This document shows positions 1,041 through 2,091 of a stretch of 64,000 bases of DNA, piece by piece; position 1 is the first letter of the stretch; every line of letters starts with the position of its first letter. Position numbers and translations under genes: made by a program. The notes beneath the pieces were generated by a model that made no database searches, had not been told where the DNA came from, and saw only the letters and a list, made by a program, of their open reading frames with translations. Origin of the DNA: Octopus sinensis (taxonomy: Eukaryota); contig NC_043013.1 in NCBI RefSeq assembly GCF_006345805.1, forward strand, positions 53,382,001 through 53,446,000. Direction: 5' to 3'.

Positions 1041-1240
1041 ATATGCTATGTATATATATATATATATATATATATAGTGACGTATATTTGCCATCTCAAT
1101 ATGGCTAACCCTAAGGGTGGATGCTACTGTAGTTTTTAGCCCCAGGAGGACACACTCCTCCAGCTGGCCATAGACACACTTTCTGTGTCCTGTCAGTATT
1201 TGCAAAGGGAAGTCATCCTTCCCGTCTTCAACTTATGATA

Positions 1241-1285
1241 CACACGGACTCGAGTTTCGAGGTATTGACCTCTCGTCAGCGTGTG
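1241..1285 (-). ncRNA. Type I hammerhead ribozyme, unit 1
   Basis: Minus strand reads CACACG-CUGACGA-GAGGU-CAAU-ACCUC-GAAA-CUCGAG-UC^-CGUGUG. It has a 6-bp stem I, the full CUGANGA core, a 5-bp stem II with G10.1-C11.1, GAAA, a palindromic stem III and a GUC cleavage triplet. Confidence 0.92.
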
Positions 1286-1592
1286 ACAATCATAGTTGTC
1301 GGCGAGAATTAGATTTCCTTCACAAATACTTATACTTTTTCCAGCGTCCACTGTCGCTGATATTGAAAAAGTGAAATCAAACAATGATAAATATCAAAGT
1401 GAGTTATATACAGTGGCGGTAACACATCGTGACGTATATTTGCCATCTCAATATGGCTACCCCTAAGGGTGGATGCTACTGTAGTTTTTAGCCCCAGGAG
1501 GACACACTCCTCCAGCTGGCCATAGACACACTTTCTGTGTCCTGTCAGTATTTGCAAAGGGAAGTCATCCTTCCCGTCTTCAACTTATGATA

Positions 1593-1637
1593 CACACGGA
1601 CTCGAGTTTCGAGGTATTGACCTCTCGTCAGCGTGTG
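1593..1637 (-). ncRNA. Type I hammerhead ribozyme, unit 2
   Basis: Identical 45-nt motif, 352 bp from the first. Confidence 0.92.
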
Positions 1638-1943
1638 ACATCATAGTTGTCGGCGAGAATTAGATTTCCTTCACAAATACTTATACTTTTTCCAGCGTCC
1701 ACTGTCGCTGATATTGAAAAAGTGAAATCAAACAATGATAAATATCAAAGTGAGTTATATACAGTAGCGGTAACACATCGTGACGTATATTTGCCATCTC
1801 AATATGGCTACCCCTAAGGGTGGATGCTACTGTAGTTTTTAGCCCCAGGAGGACACACTCCTCCAGCTGGCCATAGACACACTTTCTGTGTCCTGTCAGT
1901 ATTTGCAAAGGGAAGTCATCCTTCCCGTCTTCAACTTATGATA

Positions 1944-1988
1944 CACACGGACTCGAGTTTCGAGGTATTGACCTCTCGTCAGCGTGTG
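1944..1988 (-). ncRNA. Type I hammerhead ribozyme, unit 3
   Basis: Identical 45-nt motif, 351 bp from the second. Confidence 0.92.
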
Positions 1989-2059
1989 ACAATCATAGTT
2001 GTCGGCGAGAATTAGATTTCCTTCACAAATACTTATACTTTTTCCAGCGTCCACTGTCG

Positions 2060-2091
<32 letters not shown>

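What the first reader, a model, noticed from the sequence alone, without database searches (positions are those of the whole stretch)
1077..2065. Retrozyme-like array: ~350-bp tandem units, each with a perfect hammerhead ribozyme
Seen: 2.8 units more than 99% identical, each with CACACG-CUGACGA-GAGGU-CAAU-ACCUC-GAAA-CUCGAG-UC^CGUGUG on the minus strand. Every conserved core nucleotide is canonical and the cleavage triplet is GUC. Predicted cuts at 1950|1949, 1599|1598 and 1247|1246 would release exact 351- and 352-nt monomers. Established: animal non-LTR retrozymes (and newt satellite 2 and schistosome SM-alpha) are tandem repeats of a few hundred bp with one type I hammerhead per unit, and they yield linear and circular monomer RNAs. 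Inference: this is a recent, possibly active, non-coding circRNA-forming retroelement. I do not know of a description in this lineage but cannot check the literature.
Basis: partly seen in the sequence, partly recalled or inferred. Interest (0 to 1): 0.92.

Follow-up and report, generated by a model that had tools for sequence, protein, structure and literature searches.

The report
Hammerhead-ribozyme retrozyme array, probably octopus
A 990-bp stretch holds 2.8 near-identical copies of a 351-bp non-coding repeat, each with an intact self-cleaving hammerhead ribozyme; this is an ordinary example of the animal "non-LTR retrozyme" class, apparently from a cephalopod, where I found no published description.

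Summary
Window 1077-2066 is a tandem array with a 351-bp period, 2.8 copies and 99% identity. It carries three identical 45-nt type I hammerheads on the minus strand. Predicted cuts at 1950|1949, 1599|1598 and 1247|1246 would release 351- and 352-nt monomers. Rfam Hammerhead_1 scores 32.2 bits, just under its curated cut-off of 34 (E 4e-4 for the window).

Every sequence feature I could test fits the metazoan non-LTR retrozymes of Cervera and de la Pena 2020:
- unit size of about 350 bp with one hammerhead per unit, on one strand only
- 43% GC
- no coding capacity, primer-binding site or polypurine tract
- a strongly self-paired monomer RNA (z about -7)

Helix III is only 2 bp plus a palindromic tetraloop, as in the mussel retrozyme. 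Two copies are predicted to fold as a double hammerhead.

(TA)n runs bound the array on both sides, which fits the reported target preference of Penelope-like elements. This evidence is weak (p about 0.04), and one run may lie inside the first unit.

Transposon proteins in the window match Octopus best. I found no paper on hammerheads or retrozymes in cephalopods.

Expression, circularisation, self-cleavage and genome copy number could not be tested.

Verdict: a real feature and a new member of a known kind, of modest interest.

The parts
1077..2066 (-). Whole retrozyme-like tandem array, 2.8 units of 351/352 bp. In cleavage-site numbering it runs 236-352, 1-351, 1-352, 1-170.
   Evidence: TRF; blastn and nhmmer of the monomer against the window; piece lengths
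1950..2066 (-). First, 5'-truncated unit (117 nt), ending at the first predicted cleavage site
1599..1949 (-). Full monomer A, 351 nt, bounded by two predicted cleavage sites
   Evidence: Linear fold -125.2 kcal/mol, z -7.3. Circular fold -120.0 kcal/mol, z -6.7, 65% paired.
1247..1598 (-). Full monomer B, 352 nt. It differs from A by one substitution and one extra U in the internal loop of helix I.
1077..1246 (-). Last, 3'-truncated unit (170 nt) with one G-to-T difference. It ends at ...ACGTCAC, next to the (TA)n run.
1944..1988 (-). Type I hammerhead copy 1; predicted cut between 1950 and 1949
1593..1637 (-). Type I hammerhead copy 2; predicted cut between 1599 and 1598
1241..1285 (-). Type I hammerhead copy 3; predicted cut between 1247 and 1246
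1579..1651 (-). Hammerhead copy 2 with its extended helix I: 6 bp, a small internal loop, then about 10 more bp. This helix is also the base of the folded monomer.
   Evidence: constrained and free folds
1047..1076 (.). (TA)15 microsatellite abutting the 3' end of the array; possible integration target
   Evidence: TRF; junction shown
2063..2091 (.). (AT)14.5 microsatellite at the 5' end of the array. It shares ATAT with the monomer. It is either target DNA or an expansion inside the first unit.
   Evidence: TRF
2094..2103 (-). 10-mer ATTTCACTTT just beyond the (AT)n run, collinear with monomer positions 221-230. It may be a remnant of the first unit. Uncertain.
   Evidence: Not significant in an unconstrained alignment; the collinearity argument is post hoc.

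Best explanation
This is a short genomic array of a non-LTR retrozyme. That is a non-coding, non-autonomous retroelement of about 351 bp whose minus-strand transcript carries one type I hammerhead ribozyme per unit. The host is probably an octopus or related cephalopod.

Shown here:
- the array and its three intact ribozymes
- the exact monomer boundaries
- the absence of coding capacity
- the strongly self-paired monomer fold

Inferred from the published model for this class (PMC7229834, PMC7761336):
1. A transcript spanning two or more units cuts itself after GUC at each unit. [quoted passage not shown]
2. Helix III is only 2 bp capped by the palindromic tetraloop UCGA. Cleavage may therefore run mainly through a double hammerhead, in which two copies pair through ACUCGAGU.
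3. A host RtcB-type tRNA ligase closes the monomers into circles.
4. The stable circle serves as a rolling-circle template for a reverse transcriptase supplied in trans. The most likely source is a Penelope-like element, a family that the literature reports in octopus genomes.
5. The resulting multimeric cDNA integrates. That would explain an array of 2.8 near-identical units whose ends do not coincide with the ribozyme cut site. It would also explain an array sitting in a (TA)n microsatellite, a preferred target reported for some Penelope-like clades.
For: - Array and identity: (period 351, 2.8 copies, 99%).
- Ribozyme: RF00163, 32.2 bits, full model, E 9e-6 and 4e-4; three exact copies, none expected. 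Read directly from the sequence, the core is CUGACGA / GAAA / GUC, with a G10.1-C11.1 pair, A15.1-U16.1, and loops closing helices II and III while helix I is open.
- One polarity only: no ribozyme is reported on the plus strand.
- Non-coding: the longest ORFs are 75 aa or less and have no relatives.
- No primer-binding site or polypurine tract; GC 43%.
- Fold: z -7.3 linear and z -6.7 circular with 65% paired.
- Dimer: the minimum-energy cofold of two copies is a double hammerhead with an 8-bp intermolecular helix III. It scores -58.5 against 2 x -26.8 kcal/mol. The single catalytic fold is about 5.8 kcal/mol above the minimum-energy fold.
- Helix III has the same design as the experimentally active mussel retrozyme Mg353, ACGCGCGU.
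- Array ends fall at monomer positions 236 and 170, not at the cut site.
- (TA)n lies on both sides. A (TA)n preference of Penelope-like elements is reported in PMC8557442.
- Penelope-like elements are reported in Octopus in PMC13282606 and PMC8967140.
- A link between retrozymes and Penelope-like elements is argued in PMC7229834 and bioRxiv 10.64898/2026.07.22.740005.
Against: - The Rfam score is just below the curated threshold (32.2 against 34; one search reports nothing).
- Only one locus is visible, with no other copy in 64 kb. No related sequence turned up in any collection I could search. Dispersal, the mark of a mobile element, is therefore not shown.
- All three hammerheads are identical, so there is no covariation evidence.
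- No promoter was identified.
- Pure (TA)n runs cover 3.9% of this window, so landing in one by chance has p about 0.04.
- The 10-mer beyond the right-hand run suggests that run may lie inside the element rather than in target DNA.
- Near-identity of the units could also come from recent unequal crossing-over.
- In the minimum-energy fold the catalytic core is mispaired.
Confidence: 0.82

Rival explanations
1. This is a locally amplified, now inert satellite. A single hammerhead-bearing repeat, or an old retrozyme insertion, was triplicated in place by replication slippage or unequal crossing-over. It is not transcribed, does not form circles, and is not mobile today.
For: Only one locus is seen. 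No promoter was found. The flanking microsatellites and the microsatellite-rich context favour slippage and unequal exchange. The Li et al. preprint proposes local amplification of retrozyme units by unequal crossover.
Against: All three ribozymes are intact and the units differ at only about 3 positions in 990 bp. The monomer keeps an unusually stable fold. In every animal examined experimentally, such repeats were abundantly expressed as circles (PMC7229834). This rival concerns activity and origin, not the identity of the element.
Confidence: 0.1
2. This is a terminal repeat (pseudo-LTR or tail) fragment of an autonomous Penelope-like element rather than a free-standing retrozyme.
For: Penelope-like elements carry tandem type I hammerheads in their pseudo-LTRs and favour microsatellite targets. 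An RT-like fragment (..IKIFADDFKY..) abuts the left (TA)n run on the plus strand.
Against: According to the literature, hammerheads of Penelope-like elements are minimal variants lacking helix III or the loops. This one is canonical, with a 5-bp helix II and a loop. The repeat unit is 351 bp with no ORF, and there is no RT or GIY-YIG ORF within or next to the array. The adjacent RT-like fragment has no Pfam match, is short and decayed, and lies on the opposite strand.
Confidence: 0.04
3. This is a SINE-like, Pol III-transcribed hammerhead element of the schistosome SM-alpha kind that happens to be tandemly arranged.
For: Weak matches exist on the ribozyme strand. One is A-box-like, CAGCGACAGTGG at monomer position 240, with 1 mismatch. 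One is B-box-like, AGGTCAATACC at position 327, with 2 mismatches. A single T5 run at 229-233 lies just before the array's 5' end at 236.
Against: The matches are at chance level. The B-box-like site is simply helix II of the ribozyme. No tRNA-like structure was found. A T5 terminator in every unit would stop Pol III from making the multi-unit transcripts needed to release full monomers.
Confidence: 0.03
4. This is a chance hammerhead-like motif inside an ordinary tandem duplication, or an assembly artefact.
For: The score is below Rfam's gathering threshold. The three motifs are one independent occurrence. Microsatellite-flanked repeats are prone to misassembly.
Against: E is 4e-4 for the whole window across all 4227 families. 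The model match is full length, helix I extends about 16 bp into both flanks, and the unit size and fold match the class. The units carry distinct variants, as real separate copies would.
Confidence: 0.02

Closest known systems
Metazoan non-LTR retrozymes (Cervera and de la Pena 2020, PMC7229834), in particular the Mytilus galloprovincialis retrozyme Mg353
   Same: Both are tandem repeats of about 350 bp with one type I hammerhead per unit. Both have GC below 50%, no ORF, LTR, primer-binding site or polypurine tract, and a highly self-paired monomer RNA. Helix III has the same design in both: 2 bp plus a palindromic tetraloop (ACUCGAGU here, ACGCGCGU in mussel). Both hosts are molluscs.
   Different: There is no detectable sequence similarity outside the ribozyme core. 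The host appears to be a cephalopod, for which I found no report. Expression as circRNA is shown for mussel and untested here. Only one short array is seen here, against about 5000 copies in mussel.
Newt satellite 2 and axolotl retrozymes Rtz_331 / Rtz_353
   Same: Both have a 330-350 bp tandem unit, a type I hammerhead with a weak helix III and a palindromic loop, and predicted or observed cleavage through dimeric (double) hammerheads.
   Different: The amphibian HHR_Amex1 has a 1-bp helix III, whereas this one has 2 bp, as HHR_Amex2 does. The sequences are unrelated. The amphibian families reach 10^4-10^5 copies.
Penelope-like elements and their pseudo-LTR hammerheads
   Same: Both carry type I hammerheads in tandem and are associated with (TA)n microsatellite targets. 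Penelope-like elements are the likely source of the reverse transcriptase and endonuclease.
   Different: Penelope-like elements are 3-4 kb and encode RT plus a GIY-YIG endonuclease, and their hammerheads are minimal. This unit is 351 bp, non-coding, and has a canonical hammerhead.
Plant LTR retrozymes and hammerhead viroids (Avsunviroidae)
   Same: Both involve hammerhead-processed, highly structured small circular RNAs.
   Different: Plant retrozymes have type III hammerheads within LTRs, plus a primer-binding site and polypurine tract. Viroids are RNA replicons with ribozymes in both polarities and no DNA copy. Here the element is a DNA-encoded array with a type I hammerhead on one polarity only and no primer-binding site or polypurine tract.

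Membership tests
Hammerhead ribozyme, type I (Rfam RF00163) | Conserved catalytic core: C3 U4 G5 A6 N7 G8 A9, G12 A13 A14, A15.1-U16.1, and H17 at the cleavage site | tested here: met
   CUGACGA ... GAAA ... GUC|C read directly from the sequence. The Rfam alignment covers model positions 1-45 of 45.
Hammerhead ribozyme, type I (Rfam RF00163) | Three helices around the core, with helix I open and helices II and III closed by loops | tested here: met
   Helix I is CACACG/CGUGUG and extends into the flanks. Helix II is GAGGU/ACCUC with loop CAAU. Helix III is AC/GU with loop UCGA.
Hammerhead ribozyme, type I (Rfam RF00163) | Score at or above the family's curated gathering threshold (34 bits) | tested here: not met
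   32.2 bits. Absent from the gathering-threshold scan; E 4.2e-4 for the whole window. The shortfall is 1.8 bits.
Hammerhead ribozyme, type I (Rfam RF00163) | Self-cleavage at the predicted phosphodiester bond | not testable with these tools
   Needs in vitro transcription of monomer and dimer constructs.
Metazoan non-LTR retrozyme | Short tandem repeat (about 150-450 bp) with one type I hammerhead per unit | tested here: met
   Period 351, 2.8 copies, with one hammerhead per unit.
Metazoan non-LTR retrozyme | No coding capacity; no LTR, primer-binding site or polypurine tract; GC below 50% | tested here: met
   ORFs are 75 aa or less and have no relatives. No PBS-like site and no purine run of 10 or more. 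GC 43%.
Metazoan non-LTR retrozyme | Monomer RNA predicted to adopt a stable, highly self-paired structure | tested here: met
   -125.2 kcal/mol, z -7.3. Circular fold -120.0 kcal/mol, z -6.7, 65% paired.
Metazoan non-LTR retrozyme | Many dispersed copies or arrays in the genome (mobility) | not testable with these tools
   There is one locus in the 64-kb window. No eukaryotic genome collection could be searched, and the protein, viral and metagenome searches were empty.
Metazoan non-LTR retrozyme | Expressed as linear and circular monomer RNAs | not testable with these tools
   Needs Northern blots, RNase R treatment, divergent RT-PCR, or junction reads from total RNA-seq.
Metazoan non-LTR retrozyme | Coexistence with Penelope-like elements in the same genome | tested here: inconclusive
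   No Penelope-like element was identified in the window. The literature reports such elements in Octopus genomes. The host is assigned to Octopus-like cephalopods only through transposon protein matches of 51-62% identity.
Plant LTR retrozyme | Type III hammerheads inside LTRs, a tRNA-Met primer-binding site, a polypurine tract and 4-bp target-site duplications | tested here: not met
   The hammerhead is type I. There is no primer-binding site or polypurine tract. The repeats are head-to-tail with no internal region.
Penelope-like element (autonomous) | An ORF encoding RT plus a GIY-YIG endonuclease between pseudo-LTRs | tested here: not met
   There is no such ORF in or next to the array. 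The adjacent RT-like fragment has no Pfam match.
Viroid-like or HDV-like RNA replicon | Ribozymes in both polarities and no genomic DNA copy | tested here: not met
   The ribozyme is on the minus strand only. The sequence sits in chromosomal DNA between transposon remnants and near a U6 gene.

The most novel reading that the evidence does not exclude
This could be the first retrozyme family described in cephalopods. Its position between two (TA)n runs could be a direct footprint of integration by a Penelope-like GIY-YIG endonuclease. Across many copies, that would give sequence-level evidence for which autonomous element mobilises animal retrozymes, a question the published work leaves open. 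The family could also be a source of abundant hammerhead-derived circRNAs in octopus tissues.
Probability: 0.2. Interest if true: 0.5.

Novelty: new member of a known kind. Interest (0 to 1): 0.3.

Why it matters
Retrozymes provide a second natural route to circular RNAs that does not depend on splicing. Their promoter, their autonomous partner and their function are all still open questions.

A cephalopod family would extend the known host range within molluscs. If many copies share (TA)n flanks, the family would offer a simple genomic test of the idea that Penelope-like elements mobilise retrozymes.

On its own, this single short array is an expected member of a class already reported across many animal phyla.

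Tried and rejected
- The default Rfam scan at gathering thresholds reported only U6 and no hammerhead. E-value mode was needed.
- I looked for other copies through pseudo-ORFs of the unit in the protein collections and found none.
- Exact and degenerate motif scans of viral contigs and metagenome contigs found none. These collections are unlikely to hold cephalopod DNA, so the result says little.
- A full-text search for the ribozyme sequence in papers found none.
- I tested whether the flanks beyond the (TA)n runs are diverged units or a long target-site duplication. Left against right flank, and each flank against the monomer, were not significant against shuffles. The one exception is the collinear 10-mer at 2094-2103, which I leave unexplained.
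- I tested whether the RT-like fragment left of the array continues on the right side, which would show an empty site. There was no Pfam match with or without the joined flanks.
- I looked for a shared snRNA-type promoter with the nearby U6 gene, as reported for newt satellite 2 (from my own recollection, not checked here). There was no similarity above shuffles.
- The sigma-70 and terminator scan is irrelevant for a eukaryote and was at chance level.
- Pol III A-box and B-box matches are weak and were judged chance.
- I tested homology to the published coral, mussel and axolotl retrozymes. There was none outside the ribozyme core.
- Covariation analysis was impossible because the three hammerheads are identical.

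Full report
**Observation**

Tandem Repeats Finder reports one long-period array at 1077-2066: period 351, 2.8 copies, 99% matches, no indel columns, score 1959.

The 45-mer CACACGCTGACGAGAGGTCAATACCTCGAAACTCGAGTCCGTGTG occurs exactly three times, at 1988-1944, 1637-1593 and 1285-1241, all on the minus strand. None is expected in shuffles. C17 of the GUC triplet is base 39, so the predicted cuts are 1950|1949, 1599|1598 and 1247|1246.

The two complete monomers are 351 and 352 nt. They differ by one T/C substitution and one extra U. The truncated last unit has one more substitution.

**Is it a hammerhead?**

At Rfam's curated thresholds the window yields only a U6 snRNA gene. In E-value mode, each of the three sites matches Hammerhead_1 (RF00163, type I) over the whole model at 32.2 bits, 1.8 bits below the gathering score of 34. 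E is 9e-6 in a 1.4-kb search and 4.2e-4 for the whole window against all 4227 families.

The core is canonical:
- CUGACGA, GAAA and GUC are all present.
- A G-C pair closes helix II at the core.
- A15.1-U16.1 closes helix III.
- Helix I is the open helix. It continues into both flanks: 6 bp, a small internal loop, then about 10 further pairs.

No ribozyme is reported on the plus strand, and no other hammerhead is reported anywhere in the window. The three sites are copies of one unit, so they count as a single independent occurrence. There is no variation in them, so no covariation test is possible.

**Ribozyme architecture**

Helix III is only A-U and C-G, capped by the tetraloop UCGA, so ACUCGAGU is an 8-nt palindrome.

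| Fold | Energy (kcal/mol) |
|---|---|
| 45-mer, single catalytic secondary structure | -8.7 |
| 45-mer, alternative minimum-energy fold | -14.5 |
| Two 73-mers, cofold minimum (double hammerhead, 8-bp intermolecular helix III) | -58.5 |
| Two separate 73-mers at their own minimum | 2 x -26.8 |

Newt and axolotl repeats behave this way and cleave efficiently only as dimers (PMC7229834). However, the published mussel retrozyme Mg353 has the same helix III design (ACGCGCGU). It cleaved as a single motif at about 0.1 per min. Both modes are therefore possible here. The 1-nt indel between units lies in the internal loop of helix I.

**The monomer**

- GC is 43%, against 35% for the window.
- There is no primer-binding site and no polypurine tract.
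- There is one T5 run on the ribozyme strand.
- ORFs are 75 aa or less, with no relatives in the protein collections.
- The ribozyme-strand RNA folds at -125.2 kcal/mol, z -7.3. The complementary strand gives z -4.9.
- As a circle it folds at -120.0 kcal/mol, z -6.7, with 65% of bases paired. A long stem built on helix I carries a branched distal domain.

**Boundaries and flanks**

In cleavage-site numbering the array runs 236-352, 1-351, 1-352, 1-170. Neither end coincides with the cut site. That is what the published model of multimeric cDNA copied from a circle would give. It does not exclude local amplification.

The array lies between (TA)15 at 1047-1076 and (AT)14.5 at 2063-2091. [quoted passage not shown] Retrozymes are argued to be non-autonomous partners or derivatives of Penelope-like elements.

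The evidence here is weak for two reasons:
- Pure (TA)n runs cover 3.9% of this window, so chance placement in one has p about 0.04.
- A 10-mer (ATTTCACTTT, 2094-2103) just outside the right-hand run is collinear with monomer positions 221-230. That hints the run is an expansion within the first unit. The match is not significant in an unconstrained alignment, and I noticed it post hoc.

No other flank-to-flank or flank-to-monomer similarity exceeds shuffles.

**Host**

The window is AT-rich and crowded with microsatellites and transposon remnants. A Pif1/Helitron-like ORF and a DDE-transposase-like ORF both find Octopus sinensis or O. bimaculoides proteins as best matches, at 51-62% identity. 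The window is probably from an octopod or a related cephalopod. This is not proven.

**Comparison with what is known**

Cervera and de la Pena 2020 (PMC7229834) define metazoan non-LTR retrozymes. The defining features are:
- tandem repeats of 150-450 bp with type I hammerheads
- GC below 50%
- no LTR, primer-binding site or polypurine tract
- highly self-paired RNAs
- abundant expression as linear and circular RNAs of about 170-400 nt, circularised most likely by a tRNA ligase

They were characterised in a coral, a mussel (units of 350-390 bp) and the axolotl. They were noted in rotifers, flatworms, annelids, crustaceans and insects.

Every sequence-level feature is met here. Expression, circularity, cleavage and copy number could not be tested.

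The monomer shares no sequence with the published coral, mussel or axolotl elements outside the ribozyme core. That fits the statement that these repeats are species-specific.

I found no paper that mentions hammerheads or retrozymes in cephalopods. Two octopus and cephalopod repeat surveys list Penelope elements but no ribozyme-bearing repeats.

**Verdict**

It is a new member, in what is probably a new host lineage, of a well-described class. 'Recent and possibly active' is plausible, given three intact ribozymes and about 3 differences in 990 bp, but it is untested. Interest is modest.

The one aspect worth following up at genome scale is whether copies of this family are systematically embedded in (TA)n. 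That would bear on which autonomous element mobilises animal retrozymes.

Noticed in passing
window 3355-3462 (+): A full-length U6 spliceosomal snRNA gene (Rfam RF00026, 94.6 bits, E 3.9e-23) ending in a T run. It lies 1.3 kb from the array on the opposite strand. Its upstream 120 nt share nothing with the retrozyme monomer.
   Followed up: partly
window ~2300-2620 (-); partial copies ~54021-54130 and ~27643-27731: A tRNA-derived SINE, with an A box TGGCTCAGTGG and a B-box-like GGTTGTGAGCTCGAATTCC. It has the same orientation as the array and lies about 230 bp upstream of it. T runs between the two make Pol III read-through unlikely. ARAGORN calls no tRNA there.
   Followed up: partly
window ~850-1046 (+): A decayed reverse-transcriptase-like reading frame (..PQEIVLAPLPLIFYIKDILSDIKHGKIKIFADDFKY..ELQSD..) runs straight into the left (TA)n run. 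It has no Pfam match. I could not show that it continues on the far side of the array.
   Followed up: partly
window 50044-50613 (-): A Helitron/Pif1-helicase-like ORF (Pfam PF21530, E 1.2e-14). Its best protein matches are Octopus sinensis and O. bimaculoides at 51-57% identity, followed by Trichonephila spiders.
   Followed up: yes
window 28104-28568 (-): A DDE-transposase-like ORF (..YVWQQDNSPCHTS..). Its best match is an uncharacterised O. bimaculoides protein at 62% identity. Some relatives carry PF13358.
   Followed up: yes
window 50812-51341 and 60864-61151: Two other long-period tandem repeats: 166/135 bp at 88-95% identity, and 145 bp at 88% identity. Neither contains a hammerhead match.
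   Followed up: no
window 13126-13611 (+): An ORF whose C-terminal half (..YEERLRTLDLYSLEKRRRRGDLI..) looks by eye like the tail of a CR1-type LINE ORF2. It has no Pfam match.
   Followed up: no
whole window: Microsatellite load is extreme, with 154 or more TRF rows. There are 93 pure (TA)n runs of at least 12 bp covering 3.9% of the window. These runs generate about 140 spurious sub-threshold Rfam 'miRNA' matches in E-value mode.
   Followed up: partly
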